The notes below the pieces were generated by a model that did no database searches, was not told where the DNA came from, and saw nothing but the letters and a program-made list of their open reading frames with translations. From Raja brachyura (Eukaryota): DNA of 64,000 bases. Numbering within the stretch: position 1 is the stretch's first letter; the number at the start of each line of letters is the position of its first letter. A program made the translations under genes and the position numbers. The stretch covers positions 12,772,001 to 12,836,000 of the forward strand of contig OY740808.1 of assembly GCA_963514005.1 (NCBI GenBank), read 5' to 3'. Shown piece by piece: positions 13,193-53,423 of this stretch.

Positions 13193-13515
13193 TCAGATAC
13201 AACTGGATCTCATGATATTTGTCTTCAGCGGGTTTGACTGAGTCTCGTGTTTAACCACACAGGAGTAAAGCTCGTGTAAGTTCCACTCTGAGGCTGTCAG
13301 AGTCAGGTAACTGCTGAGACTGAACGTGTTGTCCTTGTCCTGCTGGGTCGGGCTGGTCTCAACGCCGCTATTTTTTGCACCGCCGTCGACGCTCCACTCA
13401 ACGGCCACCGAGCCCGGATTAAAGCCGTTCACCAAACAAACCAGGGTGGCGGTGCCCTTTGAGCTAACTTCATCGGCTGAAGGCGGAAGGACCGTCACGA
13501 TCGGTGCCCGAGGAT
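13193..13515 (-). CDS. IgL cluster 1 constant exon (lambda/type II-like C1 domain)
   Basis: VTVLPPS..ATLVCLVNGFNPG..EW..SLSSYLTL..W..YSCVVKH..RSSCI*, with a penultimate Cys for the H-L bond; CAG acceptor at 13518-13516. Confidence 0.95.
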
Positions 13516-15247
13516 CTGTTTAATAAGAAGTCACATTTAATTAGAGAAATGCTGCCGTTGAGATATGATTATTTTCCGAAAATACATCTCATGAAAGCTT
13601 TTATTCATTTGTAGAAATAAGTCGTTTTATTCTCGACCTATTTCAAACCATTATAATGTGAGTTTTTTTTCAATTGGGTGAACAATAAATAAAGTACGTG
13701 AAAGCAACTAGTATGGATCCTGTCTACCCGATGCATAAACTCCGGGAAAGCTCATATGATAGATCATGGCGGCTCTATTTTATAAAACTGAATACATTAT
13801 TATAACTTGTATAATGTTCATTTTACTACACAGCTCGGGCTTTACATTTATATAAATATATCAGCAGCTATAAACGATTCGCTAACGCGAAATTTATAAT
13901 AACAGATTTCAACGTATTTAATTGTCGGCACCCATTGAGATGGAGGATGACGCTATTTAGTTTCGGCAAAATTATATAAAAACTAGTCTTCGAAAGCCAC
14001 GGTTGCCGATTGGCAGATGTCGTTTACAAGCAAGGATGGAATTGTAGTTCGAATGTTCATTTATATTTGAAATGCACTGCTGCTTCCACGAAAGGCTGCT
14101 CTACTCATTAAACAAAATATCTGAAGGAAATGTGCGAATCTTTCTTTTCGCATTTCGCATTTTGATATCCTTGTTTAAACCCGTCAACCGAAATTTTGAC
14201 AGTGTTGAATATTAACGTTGCTGACCCCCCGTTACCCAAGCAATTTCCTTTCATATCTGGACAATCACTGCGAATTTTTCCGCAATATATTGGACGATCC
14301 TATTCCATGCAACTTCATTTCTACATCAACCCTCATCCAATTGACGATTTCAAAATCCGAGAGAAATTACACCATTCGCATTGGGAAGTACACGATCATT
14401 ATTGGACGGGAAAAACTAGAAAATTGAAGATTTGCATCACTTTTTCGAGTACATTAAATTCATGGTGCGGCCCTAAGTAATTCTGTGAACTGTAAAAACA
14501 TATGTTGTTTAGAATCGCAGCTGTGCGATTTCTAATCTAATATTGACGCTCTGAGGGTTAGTCTTGCTCGAGCCAATGGTTGTTTTGAAATGCTTTGAGG
14601 GCGGAATATGACTCTGATCTGTGCAAACAATTAAGCACATTTTTTTCATCGTATTATATACATTATTTTCAAGCAATATCTGCATTAAGATAAAAAGAAA
14701 ATAGCGCGCTGTCCGAAGGATATATTTTACTTACCGCCAATACCCAGCCTCGTTCCTTTACCGAAATATAAACCACTATCCCATTTGGCACAGTAATAGT
14801 CAGCAGCATCCACCGATTGAACGCTAGATATTGCGAATGTTACAGAGCTGCCAGACACCGAGATGGAAAAACGGTCCGGAATGTCCGTGCCTTTATAAAT
14901 GGTGCTGCCGGAATAATAGCCGAATAGATACTTGGGAGTTTTGCCAGGAATCTGTTGGTACCACGAGACATAGTTAGCGCCTGAACTGGAGCCCGATATG
15001 GTACAGGATATTTGTATTTTCTGTCCCGTAGAGGTGGACATCGAAGGCGGCTGACTCACTGTAACTGCCGCGCTTAAGTCTGAAATACCAGGGAAAAAAA
15101 GAAAATTGTTCAGTTTGTTGAAGTGTGGGAGATAACCCCAAATTAATGGTGAACAGAAATAAGTATAATGTCCAGGAAAGTAAAATACTCACAAACTGCG
15201 CAAAAAACCAACGCACCGACCACACGGATCCAATAAGGCATTTTCAT
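13193..15247 (-). CDS. IGL: Ig light chain gene, cluster 1 (leader + germline-joined VJ + lambda-type C); exons 15247-15193, 15079-14735, 13515-13193
   Basis: Spliced ORF MKMPYWIRVVGALVFCAV/YLSAAVTVSQPPS...YYCAKWDSGLYFGKGTRLGIG/DPRAPIVTVLPPS...RSSCI*. Both introns are phase 1 with GTGAGT or GTAAGT donors and CAG acceptors; no stops or frameshifts. Confidence 0.95.
14735..15079 (-). CDS. IgL cluster 1 germline-joined VJ exon
   Basis: V-set motifs ISC, WYQQ and DAADYYC run in frame into the J motif FGKGTRL; GTAAGT donor at 14734; no RSS between V and J. Confidence 0.95.
15193..15247 (-). CDS. IgL cluster 1 leader (signal peptide) exon
   Basis: ATG at 15247, 55 nt encoding MKMPYWIRVVGALVFCAV, followed by a GTGAGT donor. 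Confidence 0.88.
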
Positions 15248-15480
15248 TAACCGACTGAACTCCGATGGGGCGGCAGTTTCCAGGGCGAGTGGCGTGTAAT
15301 CTTGCTCTCTGGCTCTCTTTATAAATGGAATGACGAGATGTCACCGTGTGTTTATCTCTCCAAACCAATCAAACCGGTATGCTCGTCGAAGCCAATCAGA
15401 AATTGCCAGATTCTTCCTCAAAATATTCGCCACTGTGAAACATGCAGGTCTTATTTTAGAGATTTGTATTTCTAAAAAGC
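15248..15480 (-). promoter_or_regulatory. IgL cluster 1 promoter
   Basis: On the sense strand: TATAAA (15323-15318), CRE-like GGTGACATCT (15345-15336), two inverted CCAAT boxes (ATTGG at 15369-15365 and 15396-15392). Only a 7/8 octamer variant (ATTTGTAT, + strand 15462-15469). Confidence 0.65.
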
Positions 15481-16344
15481 TTCATGCGTTCTCATACATA
15501 CATACATCATAATAACAAGGATTGCCACAGTTGCCACTTCTTTACTAACAAACAATCTATAATTGTCAATATGACCCCTCCGCATATATATACTAAACAA
15601 ATTGTCTGCGAGTATTGAATATTATATTCGGTAACTGTTTAATCACCAAGTAAAACGGAATATAAATGTTTTATCTAAAGGGTCCAACTGAATCCGTATC
15701 GCTGAATCTAACATGATGACAGTCACCTCATCAACACTGTTTTATTCAAAAGCACATTAAATCTAAATATTTTTGTAATTTTATAAATCGTAAATCCCAC
15801 TGGCTGCCCTTCTACTTGTGTATCAGATAATTTAGAAAGAACCCGAGGGGACAGAACATCACCACAAAAGTCAGTAAAGTTGTAGCTTTGGAGCCAATTT
15901 TAACTACCCGATGTGTGTTGTGCTTGGAAAAGCGGTCTGTGATACTCTCATATTGTAATGCGCAGTAATTCGCAAAACTTGCCACGAACCAAAGTGGAAA
16001 GGTTACCTGTACCAAATTAATGCACATATGAGTGAAGTAAATGGGGTCATATTGGCTCTCACCGAACACTTCCAGAGTTCTTTCGACTTTGTACTACGAC
16101 AGGACGACAGGAATTTTACACACAGCACATCCATATTCAATTAAAGTTGAATAGAGTACGGGCACACCAGCTATCTGGCAAAACTGAAAAAGGAGAAACG
16201 CGAAGAGCGGTTTTCGGGAAATAGCGGGCGAGAAAAATAATTACCATGAATAATTATCCTTAAATTGTCAATAAACTAGATTAGTTTAGCAGTGCACATG
16301 ACTGGTCAGCCATCCATTAAGTTAACCGTTCATCCTTTCACCAC

Positions 16345-16545
16345 TACGTTTTCCCCATGACCTGCCTGGGATTCCCCAGGTAGCTCCGGTTTCCTCCCAC
16401 ACTACAAAGACAGATTGGTAGGTTCATTGGGTTGCTAATATTATATATTGTCCCTAAAGTGTGTAGAATAATGTTAATGTGCGGGGACTGTTGACCAGTG
16501 GGTAGAAGGGCCCGTTTAGGCGCTATATCTCCAAATTAAACTAAA
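16345..16545 (+). mobile_element. V-SINE (HE1-like) fragment
   Basis: Core ctccggtttcctcccacac..aaagac with a LINE-derived tail ending aaattaaactaaa; paralogues at 31610-31795 and 54583-54785. Confidence 0.7.
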
Positions 16546-16819
16546 GTAATTACAATTTGTACCATCCACAGAATGAGCTGCAATTGCGCGCAAAAGCCAC
16601 TCTGAACGTAGGCATGTGACTACGACTAGCAGGTTTATCTAATGTTTATTAACATAGGTCCCGGCTCTCACCGTTCTCATTCTTCTCTCCCTGCTGCACG
16701 TTTTTAACTTTGCAACGTGCAATACCGTGAGAAAATGAACACGTGAAAAATTCCACTGGCTCATGGCTGTTCATTATTACATCCCCACATGCCGATCCGC
16801 AGATGCTACATGATCCGCC

Positions 16820-18055
16820 ATAGAGTCAATGTGAGTCATATACTCATGGAGTGTGGAAACACGCCCTTCGGCCCAACCTTCCCACATCTGCCAACGTCCC
16901 ATCTACACTAGTCCCACCTGCCCGTAATGGGTCCATATCCCTCCAAAATAGTCATATCCATTTACCTCTCTAACTGTTTTTTAAACATAGAAACATAGAA
17001 ACATAGAAAATAGGTGCAGGAGTAGGCCATTCGGCCCTTCGAGCCTGCACCGCCATTCAATGTGATCATGGCTGATCATCCAACTCAGTATCCCGTACCT
17101 GCCTTCTCTCCACACCCCCTGATCCCTTTAGCCACAAGTGCCACATCTAACGCCCTCTTCAATATAGCCAATGAACTGGCCTCAACTACCTTCTGTGGCA
17201 GAGAATTCCAGAGACTCACCACTCTCTGTGTAAAGAATGTTTTCCTCATTTCGGTCCTAAAGGAATTCCCCCTGGATTAGTCCCTGGCACGTTGGATTAG
17301 TCCCTGGCACAACTCCCTCCTCTGGCTGCTTGTTCCATACACCCACCACCCTCTGTGGGAAAAAAGGTACCTCTCACATTCCTATTACATCTTTGCCCCG
17401 TAACCATAAACCTGGTCCTTGATTCACCTACTCTGGGCAAGGGACTGTACATCTACCCGATCTATTCCTCTCACGACCCTATACACCTCTATAATATTTC
17501 CCCTCATTTCCCTGCGCTCCAAGGAAGAGAGTCCCAGCCTTCTCAAACCCTCCCTATACCTCAGACCCTCTAGTCCTGGCAACATCCTCGTACATTTTCT
17601 CTGTACCTTTTCCAGCTTGTCGAAATCTTTCCTATAAGATGGTGCCCAGACTGAACACAATACTCTAAATGCGGTGTCACCAACGTCTTATACATCTGCA
17701 ACAAGACCTCCCAACCTCTATACTCATTACTCTGGCTGATGAAGGCCAATGTGCCAAAAGCCTTTTGACCACCCGATCTACCGTCGACTGCCTAGGTCCT
17801 GCCTATGTCAGAATTCCCAAAATGCAACACTTCACATTTCTCTGCAATAAGTTCCATCAACCATTCCTCAGCCTACCTGGCCATTTGATCAAGATCCTGC
17901 TGCACTTTTTCACAACCACCTCCACTATCTGCAAACCTCCCAATTTTGTATCATCTGCAAACTTGCTAATCTTACCAAGTATGATCCCATTCAAATAATT
18001 TATATAGATGACAAACATTAACGGGCCATGCACCGAAACCTGAGGCACACCCAGT
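16820..18055 (-). mobile_element. CR1 LINE fragment with a nested younger CR1 3' end (16983-17272)
   Basis: [26 protein letters not shown]; (AAACATAG)3 at ~16983. Confidence 0.85.
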
Positions 18056-18213
18056 GTTACTCCAGCACTTTGTGTTTTATTATGATTCTAGCATCCGCAG
18101 TTCCTTGTGTGTCTGTGTTCCCACTTTTGGATGGGCAATAAAACCTGCTTTCCCAAAGACGCGATCATCCTACAAATGAATAACGTTGAAGAATTGGATG
18201 TGGCCAAGTCAGA

Positions 18214-19315
18214 TAGAAACATAGAAAATAGGTGCAGAGGAGGCCATTTGGCCCTTCGAGCCTGCACCGCTATTCATTGTGATGATGGCTGATCATCCAC
18301 AATCAGTAACCCGTGCCTGCCTTCTCCCCATATCCCTTGATTCCGCTAGCCGAGAAGCTCTATCTAACTTTTAAATTCATCCCTTGAATTGGCCTTTACG
18401 GCCTTCAGTGGCACAGTATTCCACAAATTCACAACTCTCTCGGTGAGAGATTTTTCTCCACTCAGATTTAAGTGCCCCCCCCCCCATTATTCTTCGACTG
18501 TGGCCCCTGGTATTGGGCTCCCCCATCAATGGGACCATTTGTCCTGCGACCAGCCTGTCCAGTTCTTTAATAATTTTATATATTTCTATAAGATATCCCC
18601 TCATCCTTCTAAATTCCAGTGAATATAAGACCAATCTTTCCAATCTTTCCTCATATGACAGTCCAGCCATCCCAGGGATTAACCTCTTGAACCTATGGTG
18701 CACTGCCTTACTAGCAAGGATGTCCTTCCTCAAATTAGGAGACCAAAACTGCACACAATACTCGAGATGTGGTCTCACCAGGGCCATGTACAACTGCAGA
18801 TGGACCTCTTCACTCCTCTACTCACATCCTCTCATTATGAAGGCCAACATGCCATTAGCTTTCTGCACTGCCTGCTGTACCTACATGTTTTCTTTCAGTG
18901 ACTGGTGTACAAGGACACACAGGTCTCGCTGCACTTCCCTTTTTCCTAATCTGACACCATTGAGATATTAATCTGCCTCCTTGTACTTGCCACCAATGTG
19001 GATAAGCTCACAATTATCTACATTATACTGCATCTGCCATGTATCTGTCCACTCACTCAACCTGTCCAAGTCACCCTGCAACCTCCGAGCATCCTCTTCG
19101 ACTTCAAAATGCCACCCAACTTTGTGTCACCTGCAAATTTGCTAGTGTTACTTTTAATCCCATCATCTAATTCATTAATATATATTGTAAATGGTTCCGG
19201 TCCCAGCACTGAGACTTGCGGCACTCCACTTGCCATTGCCTACCATTCCGACAGGGACCCGTTTATTCCTACTCTTTGTTTCCTGTTTCCCAATCACTTC
19301 TCCATCCATGTCAAT
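18214..19315 (-). mobile_element. CR1 LINE fragment
   Basis: YMALVRPHLEYCVQFWSPNLRKD..RRMRGYLIEIYKI. Confidence 0.9.
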
Positions 19316-20364
19316 AACATGTCAAAGATCGAGCAAAGTACATTGATGAATGATTGTTTAATGTTTAACAGTCAAGAAAGTGGACATGGTGACTAATATA
19401 ACAGTGCTGACCCCACTGCACTTCCAGATGTCTATTGGGATATCTCGCTTTCATTCTTAGAGATATACGAGACTAGCTCGGCCCTTGATTTAGTAAATAG
19501 CTCACTGTTTCTTGAGTACAAAGAAGAAAACTAGTTTTCAAACAAAGCTTACTTTTGTTTCGAGATCAGATTTATTGATTGTATAAATGAATGTTTCGAT
19601 CCAGCTCACAGAACTCACCTTCATAAGAGAGAGAGAGAAAGACTGCACATTAGATCATGACCCCGAAAGGTGCCGGGACTTTTGAGTTCTCCAGACCTGC
19701 TATAGCAACCAGGAACCTGGAAGGGCAGAAATTCATGTGACATTATTAACCACCTTCTGTATCAGTTCAGGCTTAATAGGCGGAAAGGCGTGAGATTTAC
19801 TGCTTCATGAATATTTTCCCGTATTTTCTATAATAAAGATCGTGTTGGAACCAAAATAAGCTAACTCCATTCAATCTTATTACAGTTCCCCACTCAATAC
19901 CAAATTCTCAAGACTTCTCTGATATTGCTTTAAAAAGATCAATATGGCTGTGATGATATCCTTGCCATATGTCGCAATGGCTTCTGCTCCGACAACATTC
20001 AAGAAGTCCGACATTTTACAGGATTAAGTTTTTATTTTAATGACATAATCCCATCCTTTGTCTCTCTTTGCCACAAGTGCAACAAGCCCACAGTCTGTGC
20101 CGTCTACAGAATGCATTCTAATCAGTTCCCTTATGTATAACCTCAACAAAATGGTCACCAAGGCATTCAAGAACCAGACCCATAATTCATAAATTCATAA
20201 AATCATTGTTCTGGGAGCAGAATTAGGCCATTCGGCCCATCAAGGCTACTCCGCCATTCAATCATGGCCGATCTATCTTAACCTCTCAACCCCATTCTCC
20301 TCTTAAATCCGTACCCCTGTACCAATCAAGGATCTGTCAATCTCCACTTTAAAATTATTAGATT

Positions 20365-22873: not shown

Positions 22874-22904
<31 letters not shown>

Positions 22905-22960: not shown

Positions 22961-22963
22961 TAA

Positions 22964-28646: not shown

Positions 28647-28969
28647 TCAGATGCAGCTGGATCTCGTGATTGTTGTCTTCAGCGGGTTTGACTGAGTCTG
28701 GTGTTTAACCACACAGGAGTAAAGCTCGTGTAAGTTCCAGTCTGAGGCTGGCAGAGTCAGGTAACTGCTGAGACTGAACGTGTTGTCTTTATCCTGCTGG
28801 ATCGGGCTGGTCTCAACGCCGCTATTCTTTGCACCGCCGTCGACGCTCCACTCAACGTCCACCGAGCCCGGATTAAACCCGTTCACCAAACACACCAGGG
28901 TGGCGGTGCCCTTTGAGCTAACTTCATCGGCTGAAGGCGGGAGGACCGTCACAATCGGTGCCCGAGGAT
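28647..28969 (-). CDS. IgL cluster 2 constant exon
   Basis: ORF 28647..28952, C1-set domain, about 7 aa different from cluster 1 C. Confidence 0.95.
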
Positions 28970-30504
28970 CTGTTCAATAAGAAGTCACATTTCATTGGAT
29001 AATTGCTGTCGTTGGGATATCATTATTTGCCAAAAATACATCTCATTAAAGCACTCATTTATTCATTTTTGGAAATAAGTCGTTTTATTCTCGACTTATT
29101 TCAAACCATTACAGTGTGTTTTTTTTAAATTGGGTAAACAGTAAATAAAGTACGTGAGAGCAACCAGAATAGTTAATTTTCTGTCTACCCTATACGTAAA
29201 CTCCGGGAAGCCATATGTGATAGATCATGGCTGCACTATTTTACAAAACTGAATACATTATTGTAACTTTTATAATGTTCATTTTACTACACATCTCCGG
29301 CTTTACATTTATTTAAATATATCAGCAGATATAAACGATTCGCGGTCGTTAAATTTATAATAACAGATTTAAACTTATTTAATTGTCGGCACCCTTTGAG
29401 ATGGACGGTGACGCTATTTAAGTTCTGCAAAAATATATGGAAACTAGTCTTCGAAAGCCACGGTTGCCGATTCGCAGATATAGTTCACAAGCAATGATGA
29501 CATAGTAGTTCGAATGTATATTTATATTTGAAATGCATTTGAAATATATTTGGATGCGTCCACGAATGGCTGCTCTTCGTCTTAAACAACATTTCTGAAG
29601 AAAATGTGCGAAACTTTATCCTTTCGCATTTCACATATTGATATCCTAGTTTCACCCGGCAACCGGATTTTTGACAGTGTTGAATATTAACGTTGGTAAC
29701 CCTCCGTTACCCAAGCAATTTCCTTTCATATCTGGACAATCACTGCGAATATTTCCGCAATTCATTGTACGAAGCTCAAGTCAAATCATTAGCTCGCTTT
29801 CTCAGTAATTTCACTGAGTTACGTCCAAGTGAACTCGGAACATCTGTAGAGCAAAATCGCACTATCTGCACTGAAATACAGCTGGCCCAATCAAAGAATA
29901 ATGTGAATCCACGACATTAAATCAAGCAATATCTGCATTAAAATGAAATGAAAGCAGCGCGCTGTCCGATGAATATATTTTACTTACCGCCAATACCCAG
30001 CCTCGTTCCTTTACCGAAATGTATACCACTATCCCATTTGGCACAGTAATAGTCCGCAGCATCCACCGATTGAACGCTAGATATTGCGAATATTGCAGTG
30101 CTGCCTGACACCGAGATGGAAAAACGGTCTGGAATGTCCGTGCCTTTATAAATGCTGCCGGATTCATAGTAGAATAGATACTTGGGAGTTTTGCCAGGAA
30201 TCTGTTGGTACCACGAGACATAGTTAGCGCCTGAACTCGAACCCGATATGGTACAGGATATTTGTAGTTTCTGTCCCGTAGAGGTGGACATCGAAGGCGG
30301 CTGACTTACTGTAACTGCCGCGCTCAAGTCTGAGAAAAGAGAAATATCAGAAAAAAAGAAAATTGTTAAGTTTGTTGAAGTGTGGGAGATAACCCCAAAT
30401 TAATGGTGAACAGAAATAAGCATGATGTCCGGGAAAGTAAAATACTCACAAACTGCGCAACACACCAACGCACCGACCACACGGATCCAATACGACATTT
30501 TCAT
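28647..30504 (-). CDS. IGL: Ig light chain gene, cluster 2; exons 30504-30450, 30329-29988, 28969-28647
   Basis: Spliced ORF MKMSYWIRVVGALVCCAV/YLSAAVTVSQPPS...YYCAKWDSGIHFGKGTRLGIG/DPRAPIVTVLPPS...RSSCI*; intact splice sites and frame. Confidence 0.95.
29988..30329 (-). CDS. IgL cluster 2 germline-joined VJ exon
   Basis: ORF 29980..30327; V motifs continuous with FGKGTRL; CDR2 one codon shorter than in clusters 1 and 3. Confidence 0.95.
30450..30504 (-). CDS. IgL cluster 2 leader exon
   Basis: 55 nt from ATG to a GTGAGT donor; hydrophobic signal peptide. Confidence 0.88.
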
Positions 30505-30740
30505 TTACCGACTGAGCTCCGATAGGGCGGCAGTTTCCAGGACGAGTGGCGTGTAATCTTGCTCTCCGGCTCTCTTTATAAATGGAAAGACGAGATGTCA
30601 CCGTGTGTTTATCTCTCCAAGCCAATCAAACCGGTATGCTCCTCGAAGCCAATCAGAAATTGCCAGATTCTTCCTCAAAATATTTGCCACTGTGAAACAT
30701 GCAGGTCCCATTTTAGAGATTTGTATTTCTAAAAAGCTTC
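30505..30740 (-). promoter_or_regulatory. IgL cluster 2 promoter
   Basis: TATAAA at 30580-30575, CRE-like motif and two inverted CCAAT boxes as in cluster 1. Confidence 0.65.
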
Positions 30741-32039
30741 ATGCGTTCTCATACACACAGCAGAATGAAAAGGATTGCCACAGTTGCCCCTTCATTATCA
30801 ACAAGCAATCTATAATTTTCTGTATGAACCCTCCGCATATATACACTAAACAGATTGCGAGTTTTAAATATTATATTCGGTAACTGTTTAATCACCAATA
30901 AAAACGGAATGGAAATATTTTATCTAAACGGACCAACTGAACCCGTATCGCTGATTTCCTTCGCTCCATGAATGCTCCCTCACCCGCTGAGTTTCACCAG
31001 CATTTTGGTCTACCTCCATATCGCTGAACATAACATGATCACAGTCACCTCCTCAGCACTGCTTTATTAAAAAGCAAATTAAATCTATCTTTAGATATCT
31101 TTGTAATTTTAGAAATCATAAACCGCACTGGCTGCCCTTCTACTTGTGTATCAGATAATTTAGAAAGGACCTGAGGGACAGAACATCACTACAAATGTCA
31201 GTAAAGTGGCAATTTTGGTGGCTATTTTGACAACCCGATGTGTGGCGTGCTTGGAAAAGCGGTCTGTGATTCTATCCTATTGTAATGCGCAGTAATTCGC
31301 AAAACTTCCCACGACACAAAGTGGAAAGGTTACCTGTACCAAATTAATGCATATTTGAGTGAAACAAAAGGGGTCATATTGGCCCTCACCGACCAGTTCC
31401 AGAGTTCTTTCGACTTTGTAGTACTACAGGACGACAGGAATATGGCAAAATTGACAAGGGAGAAATGCGAAGAGAGGTTTTCGGTAAATAGCGGGTGAGA
31501 AAATAATCACAATTAATAATTGTCCTTAAAGTGTCATTAAACTATATTAGTTTAGCAGTGCACATGACTGGACAGCCATCCATTAACTTAACCGTTCATC
31601 CTTTCCCCACTACGTTTTCCCCATGACCTGCCTCGGATTTCCCAGGAAGCTCCGGTTTCCTTCCAGACGACAAAGACAGATTGGTAGGTTCATTGGCTTG
31701 GTAAAATTATATATTGTCCTTAAAGTGTGTAGGATAGTGTTAATGTGCGGGGACTGTTGATCAGTGGGCAGAAGGGCCTGTTTCCGCGCTGTATACAATT
31801 AGCACTATCTACAGAATGGGCTGTAACGTAGGCATGTCACTACGATAAGGAAGTTTACCTAATGTTTATTTACACGGGTATCTGCTCTCACCGTTCTCAT
31901 CCTTCTCTCACTGCTGCATGTTGTCAACTTTGCAACGTGGAATGCCGTGAGACAATGAACACGCGAAAGATTGCACTGGCTCATGGCTGTTCATTATTAC
32001 CTCCCCAAATGTCGATCCGCAGATACTACATGATCCCCC

Positions 32040-34125
32040 ATAGAGTCAAAGAAAGTCATCGTCATAGAGTGTGGCAACAAGCGCTTCGGTCCAACTTTCC
32101 CACATCGGCCAACACGTCCCATCTACACTAGTCCCACCTTCCGGTATTGGGTTCATATCCCTCCAAATATGTCATATCCATGTACCTGTCTAACTGTTTT
32201 TTTAAACGTTGGGAGAGTCCCTGGCACAACTACCTCCTCTGGCTGCTTGTTCCATACAACCACCACCCTCTGTGGGGAAAAAGATGCCCCTCGGATTCCC
32301 ATTAAATCTTTGCCCTGTCACCATGAAGCTTGTCCTCGATTCGCCCACTCTAGGCAAGAGACTGTGCTTCTACCCGATCTATTCCACTCAGGAACTTATA
32401 CACCTCTATAAGATTTCCCCTCATCTTCCTGTGCTCCAAATAAGAGTCCCAGCCCACTTAACCTGTCCCTATAGCTCAGACCCTCTAGTCCTGGCAACAT
32501 CCTCGTAAATCTTCTCTGTACCCTTTCCAGCTTGTCGAAATCTTTCCTATAAGATGGTGCCCAGACTGAACACAATAATCTAAATGCGGCATCACCAACG
32601 TGTTATACAGTACATATGCAACAAGACCACGCAACCTCTATACTCTGGCTGATGAAGGCCAATGTGCCAAAGGCCTTTTTGCCCACCCGATCTACCGTCG
32701 ACTGCGTAGGGCCTGCCCGTGTTAGACTTCCCAAAATGCAACACTTCACATTTCTCTGCATTAACCATTGCTCAGCCTGCCTGGCCAATTGATCAAGATC
32801 CTGCTGCACTTTTTCACAACCACCTTCACTATCTGCAAAACCTGCCACGTTTGTATCACCTGCAAACTTGCTAATCTTACCGAGTATGATCTCATTCAAA
32901 TCATTGATATGGATGACAAATATTAACGGGCCCAGCAGCGAACCCTGACGCACACCCAGTGTTACTCCAGCACTTTGTGTTTTATCATGGTTGCAGCATC
33001 CGCAGTTGCTTGTGTCTCTGTGTTCCCACTTTTGGATGGGCAATAAATACTGCGTTGCCAGAGACGCAATCATCCTACAAATGAATAACTTTGAAGAATT
33101 AGATGTGACCAAGTGAGACAGAAACATGGAAAATAGGTGCAGGAGGAGGCCATTTAGCCCTTCGAGCCTGCACCGCTATTCATTGTGATCATGGCTGATC
33201 ATCCACAAACAGTAACCCTTGCCTTCTCCCCGTACCCCTTGATTCCGCCAGCCTTCGAGAGCTCTATCTAACTCTTTTAAATTCATCCAGTGAATGGGCC
33301 TTTACTGCATTATGTTGCAGAATATTCCACAAATTCACAACTCTCTGGGTGAAAGTTTTTTTTCTTCTCAGTTTTAAATGGCCTCCCCTTTATTCTTAGA
33401 CTGTGGCCCCTGGTTCTGGATATTATACGTTTCCATAAGATCCCCTCCTTCTAACTTCCAGTGAATACATGCCCAATCTTTCCTCATATGACAGTCCCAT
33501 CATGCAAAGTATGAACCTCTTGAACCTACGCTGCACTGCCTCAATAGCAAGGATGCTCTTCCTTAAATTAGGAGACCAAAACCGCACGCAATACTCCAGA
33601 TGTTGTCTCAGCAGGGCCCTGTACAACTGCAGAAGGACCTCTTTACTCCTCTACTCAAATCCTATCCAACATGCCATTAGCTTTCTTCACTGCCTGCTGT
33701 ACCTGCATGGTTTTTTTTCAATGATTGGTGTACAAGGACACTCAGGTCTCGCTGCACTTCCAATTTTCCTAATCAGACACCATTGAGATAATAATTTGCC
33801 TCCTTGTTCTTGCCGCCAAAGTGGATCAACTCACAGTTATATACATTCATTGCCATGCATTTGACCACTCACAACCTGTCCAAGTCACCCTGCAACCTCC
33901 TAACATCCTCTTCGTAGTTCACAATGTCACCCAACTTTGTGTCATCTGCAAATTTGCTAGTGTTACTTTTGATCTCATCATCTAAATCATTCATATATAT
34001 TGTAAATAGTTGCGGCCCCAACACTGAGCCTTGCGGCACTCCACTAGCCACTGCCGGCCATTTGACAGGATCCCGTTTATTCCTACTCTTTGTTTCCTGT
34101 TTACCAACCAATGCTCTATCCATGC
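32040..34125 (-). mobile_element. Two CR1 fragments (32040-32960 and 33120-34125)
   Basis: RQGSLLGPLIF..KFAGDT; [30 protein letters not shown]. Confidence 0.85.
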
Positions 34126-36285: not shown

Positions 36286-37015
36286 AGTCCAGGAACCGCA
36301 GGTGCTGGTTTGCATTCGGCGCTTGGCGCAGACGCTGCCACCTATCCCGTGTCTCCAGAGGTTCTGCCTGCTGGTTGATTTACTTCAGCATTTTGTGTTT
36401 ATCTCACGCATAATAATGTGGCTGTCTGCAATGCAACTTCCAAGCACATCAAGGCTTGGAACTATATCATATTTCACTCTTCCTTGAACCAACCTTTGGA
36501 TTTATAACATGAATGGCATCACAAGATTATAGTTGATGAAAATAGACACAAAAAGCCGAAGTTGCTCAGCAGGTCACAGAGGCCGACATCAGGAAATCTT
36601 TCAGAGGGGTAAACCCTCGAAAAGCGCCTGGACCTGATGGTGTACCTGGTCGTGTTCTAAAAACCTGTGCGGACCAACTGGCTGGAGTTTTGCGGACATT
36701 TTGAACCTCTCACTTCTGAGGTCTGAGGTTCCCACCTGCGTCAAAAGGGCATCAATTATACCAGTGCCCAAGAAGAGTAAGGTGACGTGCCTCAATGACT
36801 ATCGACCTGTGGCACTAACGCCTGTGGTGATGAGGTGCTTCAAGAGGTTGATCATGGTGAAAATCAACTCCTACCTCGACAAAAACCTGGACCCACTGCA
36901 GTTCGCTTACCGCCACAACGGATTAACCGTGGATGCAACCTCGCTGGCCCTCCACTCCGCTCTAGACCACTTGGACAACAAAAACTCATATGTCAGGCTG
37001 CTATTCATCGATTAT

Positions 37016-39644
37016 CCATTGGAGAAATGGCGGCGCGCACATTCGCAGCGGCTTGGAGCTCTTCCTCTAGTTGCAGGTTTTTAGTGTTTTTCGTTTCTTT
37101 TTAAATGTTTACTTTCTGCACTGTGAGCCTTTCCCTTCAAATGGGAATGAACATAACTTATAACTGACTGCACATCTTGAATATTCGGAGTACAAACTAC
37201 ATCCCACCCCCTCCATCTGCTATATCGGAGGAGCTGCTCCGCACAGTGGTGCCTGCCTGGATAACGAGCCGAAGCAGCAAGCGGGGCAGACGGAGACGGA
37301 GACGGGAGAGGAAGCAAAAGCGGGGCAAGCGGGCCGGCATCCATGCTAGGCTAAGGAGCTCACCGGACCGGCCAGCTTTGCCTAGCCTGTTTATAGCGAA
37401 CGCCCAGTCCATTGTCAACAAGATCGACCAACTCAGACAGATGCTTTACTCAAACAGGATAAGTAGCTGTGCTTTCTTCTTCACCGAAACCTGGCTGAAT
37501 CCGAACATCCCTGACGCTGCTATTGAGCTAGCAGGCCGGACTGTTTATCGAGCAGACCGAACAGCTGACTCCGGTAAGGATAAAGGCGGTGGTGTGTGCA
37601 TATATGTGTGTAACTCATGGTGCACCACCACTGACATTGTTGAGACTTTTTTCTCCCCGGACTTGGAGTTTATTACAGTGAAATGCAGACCATTTTATCT
37701 GCCAAGGGAGTTTACAGTGGTGTTCCTCGCTGCTGTTTACATACCACCGCAAGCTAACGCTAAGCTAGCGCTGGCTAGTCTGCATGATGCTATCCACAAG
37801 CTGAAAAACAACCACCCAGATGGCGTGTTTTTAATAGCAGGAGACTTCAATCACGCCAAGCTGAAGACGGTATTGCCAACATTTCACCAGTTTATTGATT
37901 TTCCGACCAGAGAAAACAATATCTTGGACCAGGTCTACTGCAACATTACCAGGGGCTACAAAGCGTCCCCCTGTCCCCATCTTGGCCGATACGATCACAT
38001 CAGTCTGTACTTAACACCTGCATACAGACCCCTCATTGCAAGAACAAAGCCAACAGTTCGCCATCGTGGTCTGGCCAGAAGGAGCCATGGACAGGGTACA
38101 GAACTGCTTTGAGTATACTGATTGGGACATTTTTAAACAGGCTGCCACTCACAACCACACAGACCTCAACACCTACACCTGATCAGTATTGGATTACATC
38201 ACCTTCTGTATGAACAGTGTCACCACACAGAGGACAATACTGACACTCCCCAACCATAAACCATGGATGAATGGCGCCGTAACTGGCCTGCTGAAGGCCC
38301 GGGATGCAGCTTTCCACTCAGGTGATGCAGAGGTCTACAGAACAGCAAGGTCCAGTCTGAGGAAGGGCATCAGGGAAGCAAAGCACCGCTACACGAAGCG
38401 CATCGAGGAGCATTTTAACAGCTCAGACTCTCGACACGTGTGGCAGGGCATCAGAACCATCACCGGCTACAACAGCTCCACACACGCACAAAGCTCATCC
38501 CTCCCTGACGACCTGAACTGTTTTTTTGCCAGGTTTGACTGCGCCGACAGCAGTGACGACATATGGGCACAGCAGGGACCCTCACCACCGGTGCTGACTC
38601 CACGACGTGAGACAGACCCTGCAGCACATCAATCCCAACAAGGCCACCGGACCTGATGGAGTACCAGGGTGGGTTCTGAAGCACTGTGCAGGGGAGCTGA
38701 CTGCTGTGCTCACGGACCTGTTTAACACCTCCCTGAGGCAGGCCTCCATCCCCACATGCCTCAAGACAGCCACAATCATCCCTGTGCCAAAACAATCAAC
38801 CATCAGATCCCTCAACGACTATCGGCCAGTGGCGCTGACACCGGTGGTGATGAAGTGCTTCGAACGTCTGGTACTGGGACACTTGAAGAACAGCATCCCC
38901 TCCTCCTAAGACTACCATTAATTTGCCTATAGGGCAAACAGGTTGACGGAGGATGCAGTGTCACTGGCCCTCCACTCCACCCTGACACATCTTGACCAGC
39001 GGGACAGTTATGTGCGGATGCTATTCATAGATTATAGCTCCGCCTTTAACACCACCCCCTCCCCCCATAAACTAATCACCAAGCTAGACCACCTGGGCCA
39101 CAACAAACACCTGAGCAGCTGGGTCCTGGACTTTCTCACCGGCCGACCACAGACTGTGTGCATGGGGAGGCAGGTCTCCTCCAGCATCACCCTGAACATC
39201 GGTGCACCACAGGGCTGTGTGTTGAGCACCTTCCTCTTCTCCCTCTACACTCTCGACTGCCAGCCCACCCACGAGGCCAACGGCACACTAAAGTTTGTAG
39301 ATGACACCTTCGTGGTAGGCAGGATCACGAGTAACAAAGAGGCCGCCTACAGGACAGAGGTAGAGAACCTGGTGAGTTGGACCCGTGAGAACAACCTGAT
39401 CCTCAACGCAGTAAAAACAAAGGAGATGATCCTGGACTTCAGGAGGAGACCAAGGACCCTGGTCCATCAGCCCATCACCATTAATGGCGAGACAGTGGAG
39501 GGTGTGCAGCACATCAGGTACCTCGGGGTCAACATCAGTCATGACCAACATCACGGCGACGGCCAAGAAAGGACTCCAAAGGCTTCACTTCCTGAGGTGC
39601 TTGAAGAGGGCATTGGAGGACTGCTCCAACAAACTTTCGTTGTC
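37016..39644 (+). mobile_element. Near full-length Rex1/Babar LINE (inner copy): APE endonuclease plus RT, with frameshifts and stops
   Basis: ORF 37177..38112 with ANAQS, TETWL, GGGVCIYV, AGDFN, ILDQVY and DH motifs; downstream [23 protein letters not shown]. Confidence 0.9.
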
Positions 39645-39774
39645 NNNNNNNNNNNNNNNNNNNNNNNNNNNNNNNNNNNNNNNNNNNNNNNNNNNNNNNN
39701 NNNNNNNNNNNNNNNNNNNNNNNNNNNNNNNNNNNNNNNNNNNNNNNNNNNNNNNNNNNNNNNNNNNNNNNNNN
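39645..39774. other. Assembly gap (130 N)
   Basis: Run of N. Confidence 1.
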
Positions 39775-40909
39775 GTGTCATCCCCTCCAAGCTGGTTACC
39801 AAACTCGCAAAACTGGGTCTCTGTGCATCCCTCTGCAATTGGATCCTCCACTTCCTCATTCACAGACCACAGTCTGTTTGTATTGGTGGAAATATGTCAG
39901 ACTCGATAACAATCAGCACGGGAGCACCGCAAGGCTGCGTGCTCAGCCCCTCTGCTGTACTCACTCTATACTCATGACTGCATAGCCGGTCATGGTGCGA
40001 ACTCCATCATCAAGTTCGCTGTTGTGGGATGTATCACTGTCAGAGTCAGAGTCAGAGCATAGAAGAGAGATCGAGCAACTGTCCATCGGGTGCCAGCACT
40101 ATAACCTGGCCCTCGACACAAGCAAAACCAAGGAACTGATCGTGGACTTTGGAAGGAGTAGGATGGGGACCCACAATCCCGTTTATATCAACGCGTCGAT
40201 GGTTGAAAGGGTCTAGAGCTTCAAATTCCTGGGTGTGCACATCTCTGAAGATCTTTCCTGGTCCGAGAACACTGATGCAATTATCAAGAAAGCACATCGG
40301 CGCCTCTACTTCCTGAGAAGATTACGGAGAGTCAGTTTGTCAAGGAGGACTCTGTCTAACCTCTACCGGTGCACAGTAGAGAGCATGCTCACCAGTTGCA
40401 TCATGGCTTGGTTCGGCAACCTGAGCGCCCTGGAGAGGAAAAGACTACAGAAAGTAGTAAGCACTGCCCAGTCCATCATCGGCTCTGACCTTCCTTCCAT
40501 GGAGGGGATTTATCGCAGTCGCTGCCTCTAAAAGGCTGGCAGTATCATCAAAGAAGCCACACCATCCTGGTCACACACTCATCTCCCTGCTACCTTCAGG
40601 TAGAAGCCTGAAGACTGCAACGACCAGGTTCAGGAATAGCTACTTCCCCACAGCCATCAGGCTATTAACCTGGCTCGGGCAAAACTCTGAACATTAATAA
40701 CCCATTATCTGTTATTTGCACTTTATAAGTTCATTTATTAATGTGTGTATATATTTATATAATGGTATATGGACACACTGATCTGTTTTGTAGTCAATGC
40801 CTACTATGTTCTGTTGTGCTGAAGCAAAACAAGAATTGCATTGTCCTATCAGAGACACATGACAATAAAGTCACTTGCACTTGAACTTGAACTAAATAAC
40901 TATAAACCG

Positions 40910-49557: not shown

Positions 49558-49595
49558 CGGTCTGAAGAAGCGTCTCGACCCGAAACGTCAGTCAT
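49558..49595 (+). ncRNA. Hammerhead-like motif in a Penelope terminal fragment
   Basis: CTGAAGA-agcgtctcgaccc-GAAACGTC at 49562-49589, one mismatch in stem II; paralogues at ~11750 and ~27220 are internally deleted. Confidence 0.45.
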
Positions 49596-49943
49596 TCCTT
49601 TTCTCCAGAGATGCTGTGTGACCCGAATGAATTACTCCAACTGTTTTATGTATTTATGTAGAAACACTACGTGTTTCTTTAATATGTACCTGCGCAATGT
49701 ATTTCGATTGGGCTGCAGAAGATTCTATGAGAGTTTCGAAGAAAGAAAGAAGAACTAATTGGAAAATATACGCTTATAATGAGAGGGATCTGTTGGATCC
49801 ACAATGGGGACATAATATCATGCTTGATCTGGCTATGTAGGGGTGCGATAAAGTGGAATGTCTTCGCGGAGAAGGTTGTAAATCATTGGAATCCTCTTTG
49901 TTGGGTGGCTGTGAATGTCCCGCCATTGTAACAATTCATGTCT

Positions 49944-50590: not shown

Positions 50591-51368
50591 GGAAGATTCA
50601 ATCTTTGCTGTTTACTCCCTCAGAAAAAAAATGCAACCTACAGCGGTGATTGTGATGGAACATGACATGATAACAACAGCTTAAGCGCAATTGAAATAAG
50701 AATCCCGCCACCGGTTAATGTCAGTGTCTTTGGTGATAAAGGATGGAGGTGCGGTGCAGAGTGTGGATGGTGTAAAGTGGAGGTGGGAACAAACCATTAG
50801 TTTTACAGAATCTTGCAGAAATGTTGGGAATGAATGTCGTTTCCGGTACATTTCCAGGTATGCGCATAACTTGCCTTTATTTACAGTACGTAACGGTGCA
50901 CCTTACGAACATAATTAATAAACCCTTTAATCCCTGAAGGTGTGGAACGTTTTTGACCAAAAGATCAACCTGAAATGTCAAATCAATTTCTCACTTCAGG
51001 CCGCCTCGCCTGTTGAGTATTAACAGCATTTTCTGCCAACTTTGTGGATTCTTATTGGAGTTAAGATCACGTTTGTCATGATTGGTTTAGAACGCATTGT
51101 ATAAATTAACGAATGGCACAAACTCACTACTGTTCTGCGATTGTAATTCGGGATCGAGATTGAGGGAAAATAAATCAGCGTTTCTTGCTCAAATGTACAA
51201 GACAACACAATCCGTATTAAGTCGTCATGTTTGGGGTCAGAAATAAATCCAAGAGAATCAACAATGCATTTGACAATAGTTTTAAAACTTTACTCAACGT
51301 CTGCAAAGAATACCTTGGTACAATAACAACATATGTGGTTTTAGTTAACGCAATTGAATCGACGATGC

Positions 51369-51374
51369 TTTATT
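51369..51374 (-). terminator. Polyadenylation signal of cluster 3
   Basis: AATAAA on the minus strand about 180 nt after the stop. Confidence 0.7.
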
Positions 51375-51552
51375 CAAGAACGATATTCTTTCGAAAAAAC
51401 AACATATAAAGCGAACAAGTCATAAAAATCAAGGTTTCAACTATGAATGGCGTTTCTTTATGAAAATTCCGAAAGACAAAGACTACTTTTGTCACATGGA
51501 AAAACCCAATGGTGATTAACTAACTTTGGGGAGTTAGCTCACGCTTCAAACA

Positions 51553-51875
51553 TCAGATACAGCTGGATCTCATGATAGTTGTCTTCAGTGGGTTTGCCTG
51601 AGTCTGGTGTTTAACCACACATGAGTAAAGCTCGTGTAAGTTCCACTCTGAGGCTGTCAGAGTCAGGTAACTGCTGAGACTGAACGTGTTGTCCTTATCC
51701 TGCTGGATCGGGCTGGTCTCAACGCCGCTATTTTTTACACCGCCGTCGACGCTCCACTCAACGGCCACCGATCCCGGATTAAAGCCGTTCACCAAGCACA
51801 CCAGGGTGGCGGTGTCCATTGAGGTAACTTCATTGGCTGAAGGCGGGAGGACCGTCACGATCGGTGCCCGAGGAT
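51553..51875 (-). CDS. IgL cluster 3 constant exon
   Basis: ORF 51553..51858, C1-set domain ending RSSCI*. Confidence 0.95.
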
Positions 51876-53423
51876 CTGTTTAATAAGAAGTCACATTTTA
51901 GTGGAGAAATGCTGTCGTCTGAAAATGCTGAAAATACATCTCATTAAAGCACACATTTATTCATTTATAGAAATGTCCTTTTATTCCCGACCTATTTCCA
52001 ACCATTATAGTAGGGGTTTTTTTAATTGGTTGAACAATAAATAAAGTACGTGAAAGCAACTAGAATAGATCCTGTCGGCCCTTTGCATTAACTCCGGGAA
52101 AACATCAGTGATAGATCGTGGCTGCTCTATTTTATAACTCTGAATACATTATTATAACTTTTATAATGTTCATTTTACTACACATCTTGGACTTTACATT
52201 TATATCAATATATCAGCAGATATAAACGATTCGCGGCAGCGAAATTTATAATAACAGATTTCAACTTATTGTCGGCACACATTGAGACGGAGGGTGACGC
52301 TATTTAAGTTCGGCAAAAATATAAGGAAACTAGTCTTCGAAAGCCACGGTCACCGATTCGCAGGTGGCGTTCACAAGCAAGGATGACATCGCAGTTCGAA
52401 TGTACATTTGTATTTGAAGTGCACTGCTGCGTCTACGAAAGCTGCTCTACGTATTAAACAACATTTCTGAAGGAACAGTGCGAAACTTTCTCCTTTCGCA
52501 TTTCGCATTTCGATATCCTTGTTAAACCCGTCAACCGGAATTTTGACTGTGTTGACTATTAACGTTGCTGCCAAGATCCAAGTAGCTACAATCCTTAGCG
52601 AGGTAATTCACTCAAAGTCGCTACAGTCCCGTGGTATCCTGGTCACAAAATATGTTTGTTGAGAAATTGATTGATTGTTCGTCTGTAAAAGCTCAAGACA
52701 AATCATTAGCTCGCTTTTGCAGTCATTTCACTAAGTTATGTCCAAGTGAACTCGGAACAACTGTATAGCAAGACCGCACTATCTGCACTGAAATGCAGCT
52801 GGCCGGATCAAGTGCAATGTGAACTTACGGCATGAAATCAAGCAATATCTGCATTAAAAGAAAAAGAAAACTGCGCGCTGCCCGAAGAATATATTTTACT
52901 TACCGCCAATACCCAGCCTCGTTCCTCTACCAAAAAAATAACCAGCTTCCCATTTGGCACAGTAATAGTCCGCAGCATCTTCCGGTTGAACGTTCGATAT
53001 TTGTAATGTTCCCGTGTTGCCTGACTTTGACGGGGAGAAACGGTCTGGAACGTCCGTGCCTTTTTCAATGCTGCCACTTGAATGATAGTAGAATAGATAC
53101 TTGGGAGTTTTGCCAGGAATCTGTTGGTACCAGGAGGTATATTTTACGCCTGAACTGGAACCCGATATGGTACAGGATATTTGCATTGTCTGTCCCGTAG
53201 AGGTGGACATCGAAGGCGGCTGACTTACTGTAACTGCTGCGCTTAAGTCTGAGAAAAGAGAAATATCAGAAAAAAAGAAAATAGTTAAGTTTGTTGAAGT
53301 GATGGAGATACCCCCAAATTAATGGTGAACAGAAATAAGTATAATGTCCAGGAATGTAAAATACTCACAAACTGCGCAAAAAACCAACGCACCGACCACA
53401 CGGATCCAATACGACATTTTCAT
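51553..53423 (-). CDS. IGL: Ig light chain gene, cluster 3; exons 53423-53369, 53248-52904, 51875-51553
   Basis: Spliced ORF MKMSYWIRVVGALVFCAV/YLSAAVTVSQPPS...YYCAKWEAGYFFGRGTRLGIG/DPRAPIVTVLPPS...RSSCI*; intact. Confidence 0.95.
52904..53248 (-). CDS. IgL cluster 3 germline-joined VJ exon
   Basis: ORF 52896..53210; V motifs continuous with FGRGTRL; FR3 reads RFSPSKSGNTGTLQISNVQPEDAADYYC. Confidence 0.95.
53369..53423 (-). CDS. IgL cluster 3 leader exon
   Basis: 55 nt from ATG to a GTGAGT donor. Confidence 0.88.

What the first reader, a model, noticed from the sequence alone, without database searches (positions are those of the whole stretch)
13193..53423. Three intact Ig light-chain genes with V and J pre-joined in the germline
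Seen: at 14735-15079, 29988-30329 and 52904-53248 the V region (…YYC) runs in frame into J (FGxGT) with no heptamer/nonamer. Each gene keeps its leader intron, J-C intron, own promoter, C exon and polyA signal. Established: cartilaginous fish arrange Ig genes as multiple V-J-C clusters, and lambda/type II (and skate type I) light chains can be germline-joined. Inference: these encode pre-formed antibody chains that need no RAG rearrangement, so expression and allelic or cluster exclusion must be controlled some other way. The phenomenon is known, but this locus may be undescribed.
Basis: partly seen in the sequence, partly recalled or inferred. Interest (0 to 1): 0.8.

Follow-up and report, generated by a model that had tools for sequence, protein, structure and literature searches.

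The report
Germline-joined skate lambda light-chain genes
Three intact antibody light-chain genes of a skate already have their V and J parts fused in inherited DNA, a feature known in sharks and skates since the 1990s, so this is a clean new example and not a new phenomenon.

Summary
On the minus strand lie three complete light-chain genes, each with a leader exon, one fused V-J exon (15079-14735, 30329-29988, 53248-52904), a C exon and AATAAA. All splice sites are canonical, there are no stops, and no heptamer/nonamer signal is present. They sit in tandem duplicated units of about 15-22 kb.

V is lambda-like. The C exons fall in a well-supported clade of skate "lambda-1 light chain-like" RefSeq proteins, inside the cartilaginous-fish lambda (type II) group that holds sandbar shark lambda.

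The joins are germline, not somatic:
- All three junctions have the same length.
- 19 RefSeq proteins of three other skate species carry almost the same 8-residue CDR3.
- Genomic DNA contigs from four samples cover the junction with no joints; one listed contig spans the whole V-J exon.

The C exons are under purifying selection, and a 280-bp promoter block is as conserved as the exons. Expression could not be tested because no RNA run was found. There is no perfect octamer.

The assembly gap (39645-39774) lies between two LINE reverse-transcriptase fragments, about 9 kb or more from any Ig gene part.

Reviews state that all lambda genes studied in cartilaginous fish are germline-joined. The scan has also noted the same kind of gene on other DNA of this genome. 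Verdict: real, ordinary for the lineage, low novelty.

The parts
15248..15529 (-). g1 conserved 5' block with TATAAA (15323-15318), two inverted CCAAT boxes (ATTGG at -149 and -122) and the 5'UTR
   Evidence: The block differs by 4-6% between paralogues, against 9-14% in the flank further upstream and 12-16% in the J-C intron. There is no perfect octamer.
15193..15247 (-). g1 leader exon (MKMPYWIRVVGALVFCAV plus 1 nt of a split Tyr codon)
   Evidence: ATG at 15247, donor T|GTGAGT. RefSeq skate proteins read ...FCAV-Y-LSAAVTV, which confirms this splice.
14735..15079 (-). g1 fused V-J exon (345 nt), CDR3 AKWDSGLY, J FGKGTRLGIG
   Evidence: Pfam V-set 1.1e-15. 98.2% identical to the V-J part of Amblyraja radiata XP_032899427.1. 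Contig record 21 of run X5 spans 14720-15083.
13193..13515 (-). g1 C exon coding part (C1-set domain, C-terminal ...RSSCI, stop 13195-13193)
   Evidence: C1-set 5.2e-27. Falls in a 99% SH-aLRT clade with skate lambda-like proteins. dN/dS is 0.23-0.33 against the other two copies.
13009..13014 (-). g1 polyadenylation signal AATAAA, 181 nt after the stop
30505..30786 (-). g2 conserved 5' block with TATAAA (30580-30575)
30450..30504 (-). g2 leader exon
29988..30329 (-). g2 fused V-J exon (342 nt; CDR2 one codon shorter), CDR3 AKWDSGIH
   Evidence: V-set 2.5e-15.
28647..28969 (-). g2 C exon coding part; AATAAA at 28467-28462
53424..53705 (-). g3 conserved 5' block with TATAAA (53499-53494)
53369..53423 (-). 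g3 leader exon
52904..53248 (-). g3 fused V-J exon (345 nt), a divergent V lineage, CDR3 AKWEAGYF, J FGRGTRLGIG
   Evidence: V-set 1.5e-19. At most 76% identical to any listed skate protein, and basal in the skate subfamily on the V tree.
51553..51875 (-). g3 C exon coding part; AATAAA at 51374-51369
36577..40891 (+). LINE-type insertion (endonuclease plus reverse transcriptase) found only in this duplication unit. It contains the assembly gap 39645-39774 and is not part of the Ig genes.
   Evidence: No counterpart in the other units. Exo_endo_phos and RVT_1 hits. The sequence after the gap repeats residues 41-201 of the RT before the gap, in three frames at 43-53% identity. The two sides are therefore two RT fragments, not one frame.

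Best explanation
These are three functional-looking, germline-joined immunoglobulin lambda (type II) light-chain miniclusters of a skate, arranged head-to-tail in tandem duplicated units of about 15-22 kb.

Shown:
- Each gene is leader - intron - fused VJ exon - intron - C exon - polyA signal within about 2.3 kb.
- There is no recombination signal.
- All reading frames and splice sites are intact.
- The C exon is under purifying selection.
- The promoter block is conserved as strongly as the exons.
- The join is inherited: it has the same junction length in all copies, and nearly the same CDR3 occurs in three other skate species.

Inferred:
- Each gene is transcribed from its own TATA promoter in B-lineage cells and spliced to a pre-light chain of 239-240 residues.
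- The chain pairs with a heavy chain through its C-terminal cysteine.
- No RAG step is needed, so there is no combinatorial or junctional diversity. Variation comes from the many diverged gene copies (differences lean towards the CDRs) and probably from somatic hypermutation.
- Which cluster is used would be decided by transcriptional activation.
- The fusion most likely arose once, by RAG-type joining in germ cells of an ancestor of these skate genera, and was then amplified by tandem duplication.
For: Gene anatomy and intact frames.

Domains: V-set and C1-set.

No signal sequence for rearrangement: no RSS, and no free V, J or C segment.

Tandem duplication units at 83-91% identity.

Lambda identity:
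- The best solved-structure matches of V are human V-lambda-1 domains (87-90 bits), against 62-74 bits for kappa domains.
- The only named relative of the C exon in the first search was 'immunoglobulin lambda-1 light chain-like' of Mustelus.
- On the C tree the window's exons sit in a 99% clade with Amblyraja, Leucoraja and Rhinoraja proteins. That clade lies inside a batoid clade (97%), sister to the shark/chimaera clade that holds sandbar shark lambda.
- RefSeq proteins reproduce both splice junctions.

Germline status:
- CDR3 is 8 residues in all 19 skate subfamily proteins (AKWDSGLH, AKWDSGLY and close variants) and in all three window genes.
- Runs X1, X4, X5 and X6 hold about 14.6-35 million contigs each (about 1.6 Gb in X1, X4 and X5; 2.4 Gb read of X6), so I take them as genomic DNA. 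They cover exons, introns and flanks alike with no joints, and one listed contig spans the whole VJ exon.

Selection:
- dN/dS is 0.23-0.33 for C, 0.37-0.58 for the frameworks and 0.57-0.93 for the CDRs.
- The promoter block differs by 4-6%, against 12-16% in the intron.

Literature:
- All lambda genes studied in cartilaginous fish are joined (PMC5192425 and PMC4279169).
- Joined skate genes are expressed (PMC2192082 abstract).
- Germline joining arises by RAG-like activity (PMC2193156).
Against: - There is no RNA evidence. None of the 20 holder runs is on record as RNA, so transcription, splicing and B-cell specificity are inferred.
- No perfect Ig octamer lies upstream; the nearest is ATACAAAT at -222.
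- The tissue of the DNA runs is unknown, and only one listed contig (95% identical, possibly a paralogue) is shown to bridge the whole VJ exon.
- The trees contain no kappa or sigma sequences, so lambda membership rests on the PDB comparison, on database names and on grouping with sandbar shark lambda.
- One clade member is auto-named 'kappa light chain-like' (P0108).
- Hot-spot (WRCY/RGYW) and AGY-serine enrichment in the CDRs was not significant.
Confidence: 0.9

Rival explanations
1. The joins are somatic V-J rearrangements of lymphocytes that the assembly happened to capture; the true germline has split V and J with recombination signals.
For: The tissue of origin of the assembly and of the DNA runs is not known.
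Against: - Three separate clusters all carry a junction of the same length.
- Nearly the same CDR3 is found in 19 RefSeq proteins of three other skate species.
- DNA contigs of four samples cover the junction without any joint or signal-bearing loose end.
- A polyclonal somatic join would not assemble at full depth.
Confidence: 0.02
2. They are not antibody light chains but members of the non-rearranging VJ-C1 surface-receptor families that this genome also carries.
For: Other follow-ups in this genome describe VJ-C1 receptor genes with a built-in J strand.
Against: - There is no transmembrane exon. The C exon ends ...RSSCI-stop, with AATAAA 181 nt later.
- The C exon is 71-76% identical to shark and sawfish light chains, and groups in a lambda set that includes sandbar shark lambda.
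- V is closest to human V-lambda-1.
Confidence: 0.03
3. The genes are intact-looking but silent copies (young pseudogenes) in a large array in which only a few clusters are used.
For: - No RNA run was found.
- There is no perfect octamer.
Against: - All frames and splice sites are intact in three copies whose introns have diverged 12-16%.
- C dN/dS is 0.23-0.33.
- The promoter block is conserved like an exon.
- The g1 V-J exon is 98% identical in protein to an Amblyraja gene.
Confidence: 0.08
4. The fused VJ exon is primordial: a lambda V gene never split by the RAG transposon, rather than one secondarily re-joined in germ cells.
For: No split lambda gene has been reported in any cartilaginous fish studied (PMC5192425, PMC4279169). 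Nothing in the window bears a footprint of signals.
Against: - The J part is a typical FGxGT J strand followed by a J-type splice donor, as in rearranging lambda genes.
- Tetrapod and sturgeon lambda genes are split (my own knowledge; PMC5985310, describes sturgeon lambda only from cDNA).
- For shark NS4/kappa genes, germline re-joining by RAG-like activity was reconstructed (PMC2193156).
- Different lambda subfamilies have different fixed CDR3 lengths (5, 8, 9, 11, 12), which fits several joining events.
Confidence: 0.1

Closest known systems
Skate 'immunoglobulin lambda-1 light chain-like' genes in RefSeq (Amblyraja radiata XP_032899424-433, Leucoraja erinacea XP_055511137-142, Rhinoraja longicauda XP_078251645)
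   Same: They share the same leader, the same two splice junctions and the same 8-residue CDR3 (AKWDSG + two residues). J (FGKGTRLGIG) and the C-terminal cysteine are also shared, and the proteins are 238-240 residues long. The g1 V-J exon is 98.2% identical to XP_032899427.1, and the C exons are 88-92% identical. Consecutive accession numbers on one chromosome-sized contig per species suggest neighbouring genes there too.
   Different: No listed protein is identical. All three window C exons carry DGG(A/V)KNS where all Amblyraja and Leucoraja copies have DGSA(K/R)NS. The window is therefore probably from another skate species, which I did not determine. The g3 V has no close listed relative (at most 76%).
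Sandbar shark (Carcharhinus plumbeus) lambda light-chain clusters, and type II/NS3 genes of horn shark, nurse shark, little skate and ratfish
   Same: The V-J-C minicluster layout with V and J fused in the germline is the same. So are the lambda-like V and C and the absence of combinatorial or junctional diversity (PMC5192425, PMC4279169, PMC2193156). The window's C exons fall in the same lambda set as the sandbar shark proteins.
   Different: The C exon is about 70-75% identical to the shark and sawfish light chains listed nearest after the skate subfamily. The skate subfamily here is a separate, skate-specific branch (99% support).
Raja erinacea type I (sigma-2) light-chain clusters (Anderson et al. 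1995, PMC2192082)
   Same: This is also a skate multigene family in which every cluster is germline-joined. Differences between copies are concentrated in the CDRs, and the genes are expressed and possibly hypermutated (abstract).
   Different: It is a different isotype (sigma-2 rather than lambda). That study counted at least 89 clusters by cloning and PCR, and did not give their chromosomal arrangement.

Membership tests
Immunoglobulin lambda (elasmobranch type II / NS3) light chain | V domain of lambda type | tested here: met
   The best PDB alignments are human V-lambda-1 domains (87-90 bits; TQPPS, SGSSS..., DEADYYC..WDS motifs), against 62-74 bits for kappa domains in the same hit list. 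The long CDR2 (10-11 residues) is also seen in other cartilaginous-fish lambda proteins in the set, for example Mustelus P0002.
Immunoglobulin lambda (elasmobranch type II / NS3) light chain | C domain groups with known cartilaginous-fish lambda | tested here: met
   C1-set 5e-27. On the tree the window C exons sit in a skate clade (99%), inside a batoid clade (97%), sister to the clade holding sandbar shark lambda and Hydrolagus. Caveat: no kappa, sigma or sigma-2 sequences were available as outgroups.
Immunoglobulin lambda (elasmobranch type II / NS3) light chain | [quoted passage not shown] | tested here: met
   Leader, VJ and C lie within about 2.3 kb. The C exon ends ...RSSCI-stop, with AATAAA 181-182 nt downstream.
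Immunoglobulin lambda (elasmobranch type II / NS3) light chain | Expressed in B cells and paired with Ig heavy chains | not testable with these tools
Germline-joined Ig genes of cartilaginous fish | V and J contiguous in frame in one exon, with no heptamer/nonamer signals | tested here: met
Germline-joined Ig genes of cartilaginous fish | The join is inherited (present in non-lymphoid or germline DNA), not somatic | tested here: met
   The junction has the same length in three paralogues, and nearly the same sequence in 19 proteins of three other skate species. Genomic DNA contigs of four samples cover it without joints. The tissue of those runs is unknown, so a direct test on non-lymphoid DNA is still missing.
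Germline-joined Ig genes of cartilaginous fish | Ig-type promoter (octamer plus TATA) retained | tested here: inconclusive
   TATAAA at -76 and a conserved 280-bp block are present. Only a one-mismatch octamer (ATACAAAT) is found, at -222.

The most novel reading that the evidence does not exclude
At least one V lineage (g1) is a fixed-specificity, innate-like light chain kept almost unchanged between skate genera. Its whole V-J exon, including CDR1 and CDR3, is 98% identical in protein to an Amblyraja radiata gene, while the linked C exon is only 92% identical and its neighbouring paralogues differ more. C exons carry species-specific signatures, which suggests concerted evolution, whereas V lineages are shared between species. 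If this is right, selection preserves particular pre-formed binding sites rather than diversity.
Probability: 0.25. Interest if true: 0.4.

Novelty: new member of a known kind. Interest (0 to 1): 0.2.

Why it matters
Germline-joined light chains are the textbook exception to the rule that antibody genes must be assembled by RAG in each lymphocyte. They also bear on how the RAG transposon shaped antigen-receptor genes. This window adds nothing new in kind. It does give a clean, contiguous view of three neighbouring clusters with their promoters, introns and duplication units. That view could serve as a reference for asking how a B cell picks one of many ready-made genes, and how V and C exons evolve at different rates in such arrays.

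Tried and rejected
- **PDB search with the C exon.** Multi-domain heavy chains dominated the ranking, so it did not separate lambda from kappa.
- **First two word searches with single exons.** They gave only 2 hits and 1 hit, because the length window excludes full-length light chains. A search with the natural database protein P0002 was used instead.
- **Joined spliced protein.** Exons were searched apart, and only the two split codons were read. An exact look-up of the full protein in databases was therefore left out.
- **The look-up of encoding contigs.** It was closed, so no skate or shark genomic locus could be fetched for DNA-level comparison or for dS between species.
- **Criscitiello & Flajnik 2007 (PMC7094790).** Not held.
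- **Hot-spot tests.** WRCY/RGYW density and AGY versus TCN serine codons in CDRs against frameworks were not significant (p = 0.15 and 0.41).
- **Adjacent-substitution test.** There is an excess in the g3 V exon, but also in the poorly aligned part of the intron, so it is not evidence of hypermutation-like footprints.
- **Conserved CACAGTG in each promoter block.** No nonamer follows at 12 or 23 bp, so I rejected it as a recombination signal.
- The Pfam query window:14736-15080 includes the last intron base, so its first residue reads D instead of the true split-codon Y. This has no effect on the result.

Full report
**Observation**

Read as reverse complement, each place is one exon. It starts after a CAG acceptor, runs through a complete V region (...DAADYYC), an 8-residue CDR3 and a J strand, and ends at a G|GTAAGT donor.
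- g1: CDR3 AKWDSGLY, J FGKGTRLGIG.
- g2: CDR3 AKWDSGIH, J FGKGTRLGIG.
- g3: CDR3 AKWEAGYF, J FGRGTRLGIG.

Upstream of each lies a 55-nt leader exon (ATG at 15247, 30504, 53423) and a 113-120-nt GTGAGT...CAG intron. Downstream lies a 1018-1219-nt intron, then a 323-nt C exon ending in TGA (13193, 28647, 51553), then AATAAA 181-182 nt later.

The exon lengths sum to 723, 720 and 723 nt with no internal stop. The two split codons read Tyr and Asp. Pfam calls V-set (1e-15 to 1e-19) and C1-set (5e-27).

I did not build or search the joined protein.

**No recombination signals, no spare segments**

- A heptamer-spacer-nonamer pattern is absent from the whole window.
- The J sequence occurs exactly three times, each time fused to a V.
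- tblastn finds only three V and three C copies.
- The 15 bare CACAGTG heptamers include one in each conserved promoter block, but none is followed by a nonamer at 12 or 23 bp.

**Surroundings and the gap**

The window is a head-to-tail array of duplicated units of about 15-22 kb at 83-91% identity. Partial units lie at both ends.

The gap at 39645-39774 lies in a 4.3-kb insertion (about 36577-40891) that only the third unit has. That insertion encodes an endonuclease and a reverse transcriptase of a LINE.

The two sides of the gap are not continuous in frame. The RT domain is complete before the gap. The sequence after the gap repeats residues 41-201 of that RT, at 43-53% identity, split over three frames. 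The ORF that the ORF finder draws across the Ns is therefore meaningless, and the gap may hide more than 130 bases.

The gap is about 8.9 kb from g2's promoter block and 11.6 kb from g3's polyA signal. It affects only the g2-g3 distance, not any gene model. I did not try to fill it.

**What the genes are**

- The V-J exon aligns best with human V-lambda-1 domains (87-90 bits), and less well with kappa domains (62-74 bits).
- The C exon's only named relative within the length limits was a Mustelus 'immunoglobulin lambda-1 light chain-like' protein.
- Searching with that natural protein gave 234 hits at E <= 1e-10. The 120 listed are nearly all named cartilaginous-fish light chains, and include the sandbar shark lambda chains.
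- Against this set, the window's exons are closest to a skate subfamily from Leucoraja erinacea, Amblyraja radiata and Rhinoraja longicauda.
- On the C tree they form a 99%-supported clade with that subfamily. The clade lies inside a batoid clade (97%), sister to the shark and chimaera clade that contains sandbar shark lambda.
- Cluster members listed have consecutive RefSeq accession numbers on one chromosome-sized contig each in Amblyraja and Leucoraja. I read that as neighbouring genes there too.
- These proteins reproduce my splice model exactly (...FCAV-Y-LSAAVTV... and ...GIG-D-PRAP...).

No listed protein is identical to a window gene. The window's C exons share DGG(A/V)KNS, where all Amblyraja and Leucoraja copies have DGSA(K/R)NS. 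The source is therefore a skate, probably another species, which I could not name. Other follow-ups on this genome also call it a skate.

The long CDR2 (10-11 residues, against 7 in human V-lambda) is shared with shark lambda, for example Mustelus P0002. It is not a sign of a separate isotype.

**Germline or somatic?**

Three lines of evidence point to germline.
1. All three junctions have the same length and nearly the same sequence.
2. All 19 RefSeq proteins of the subfamily, from three species, have an 8-residue CDR3 of the form AKWDSG(L/V/I)(H/Y), or AKWDNGLH in one. Other lambda subfamilies have their own fixed lengths (5, 8, 9, 11, 12).
3. Four runs from three coded organisms and three studies hold 14.6-35 million contigs each (about 1.6 Gb in X1, X4 and X5; 2.4 Gb read of X6), so I take them as genomic DNA.
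   - They cover exons, introns and flanks at similar depth.
   - They show no joints.
   - One listed contig runs from the J-C intron to the leader intron across the whole V-J exon (14720-15083, 17 mismatches).
   - A loose end at 14766 reads, in gene orientation, YCAVWKDAL. That is the fused end of another lambda subfamily, not a signal sequence.

The tissue of these runs is unknown, and contigs cannot prove absence of a rare split form. Even so, a somatic origin is very unlikely.

**Signs of function**

| Region | Difference between paralogues |
|---|---|
| J-C intron | 12-16% |
| Upstream 5' flank | 9-14% |
| C exon | 5-6% |
| 280-bp block upstream of ATG | 4-6% |

dN/dS is 0.23-0.33 in C, 0.37-0.58 in the frameworks and 0.57-0.93 in the CDRs. 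This is the pattern reported for skate type I genes (PMC2192082 abstract).

The promoter block has TATAAA at -76 and two inverted CCAAT boxes, but no perfect octamer.

No RNA run was available, so expression is inferred.

**Mechanism**

Shown: the anatomy, the lack of signals, the inherited join, the tandem amplification and the selective constraint.

Inferred from established knowledge:
- Each cluster is transcribed and spliced without any RAG step.
- The chain pairs with a heavy chain through the C-terminal cysteine.
- Diversity comes from the many diverged copies plus somatic hypermutation.
- The fusion arose by RAG-like joining in germ cells (PMC2193156), before these skate genera split.

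**Comparison with what is known**

- Reviews state that lambda/type II genes are germline-joined in every cartilaginous fish studied (PMC5192425; PMC4279169).
- Little skate type II is listed as lambda (PMC5985310).
- Type I genes of Raja are all joined (PMC2192082).
- The orthologous genes are already auto-annotated in three skates.
- The scan itself has noted the same kind of gene on other pieces of this genome, and in arrays 184 kb before and about 20 kb beyond this window.

The finding is therefore real and well preserved, but it is a new member of a known kind.

**The one mildly unusual point**

g1's V-J exon is 98% identical in protein to an Amblyraja gene, while its C exon is 92% identical. 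C exons also carry species-specific signatures. This hints at conserved pre-formed specificities combined with concerted evolution of C. It rests on one gene pair, without DNA from the other species, so I give it only as the novel case.

Noticed in passing
window 36577-40891 (gap at 39645-39774): A LINE-type insertion (Exo_endo_phos plus RVT_1) found only in the third duplication unit. The assembly gap sits between an RT with an open frame and a second, frameshifted copy of the same RT region. The scaffold join is therefore inside repeated LINE sequence, and the g2-g3 distance is uncertain.
   Followed up: yes
window 6650-10920: A second insertion, specific to the first unit, with a LINE reverse-transcriptase ORF (9361-10002; 54% identical in protein to the RT at 38943-39644).
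   Followed up: partly
window 14298-14668 (g1 J-C intron): g1 has about 370 nt here that do not align with the about 150 nt found in g2 and g3. This stretch holds a perfect octamer ATGCAAAT on the gene strand (14438-14431). Contigs of runs X1, X4 and X5 break off at 14643 and 13933 into other sequence, so other copies or haplotypes differ in structure here.
   Followed up: partly
window 15431-15437, 30688-30694, 53607-53613: A perfect CACAGTG heptamer is conserved in the promoter block of all three genes, about 185 nt upstream of the ATG, on the gene strand. No nonamer follows at 12 or 23 bp. It is probably just part of the conserved block.
   Followed up: partly
window 52904-53100 (g3 V, CDR2 to J): The 3' half of the g3 V exon differs from g1 and g2 by 14-27% per 100-column alignment window (21-27% in the CDR2-FR3 window). 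Its own leader intron and start of the J-C intron differ by about 7-11%, and its first 100 nt by about 9%. The gene looks mosaic (conversion from another V lineage) or strongly selected. Adjacent substitutions are in excess (15 against about 7 expected).
   Followed up: partly
window 13205-13305 (C exon): Contig word depth is about 8 to 10 times that of the flanks in all four DNA runs. This fits many near-identical C exons elsewhere in the genome.
   Followed up: no
window 16000-20000 and 32000-34000: Strongly negative GC skew (-0.20 to -0.28). The same repeat is present in both orientations within each unit (for example 1180-1925 against 18964-18213). It is probably a transposable element carried along with the duplication unit.
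   Followed up: no
proteins P0099, P0126-P0130, P0138 (Leucoraja) against P0094, P0123-P0137 (Amblyraja): C regions group by species even when the V regions belong to different subfamilies (for example Leucoraja-specific SARNS and LHDLY). This suggests concerted evolution of C exons alongside V lineages shared between species.
   Followed up: partly
protein P0001: A 125-residue shark-like lambda J-C fragment is filed in NCBI as a hypothetical protein of Aeromonas veronii. This is most likely host contamination of a bacterial assembly.
   Followed up: no
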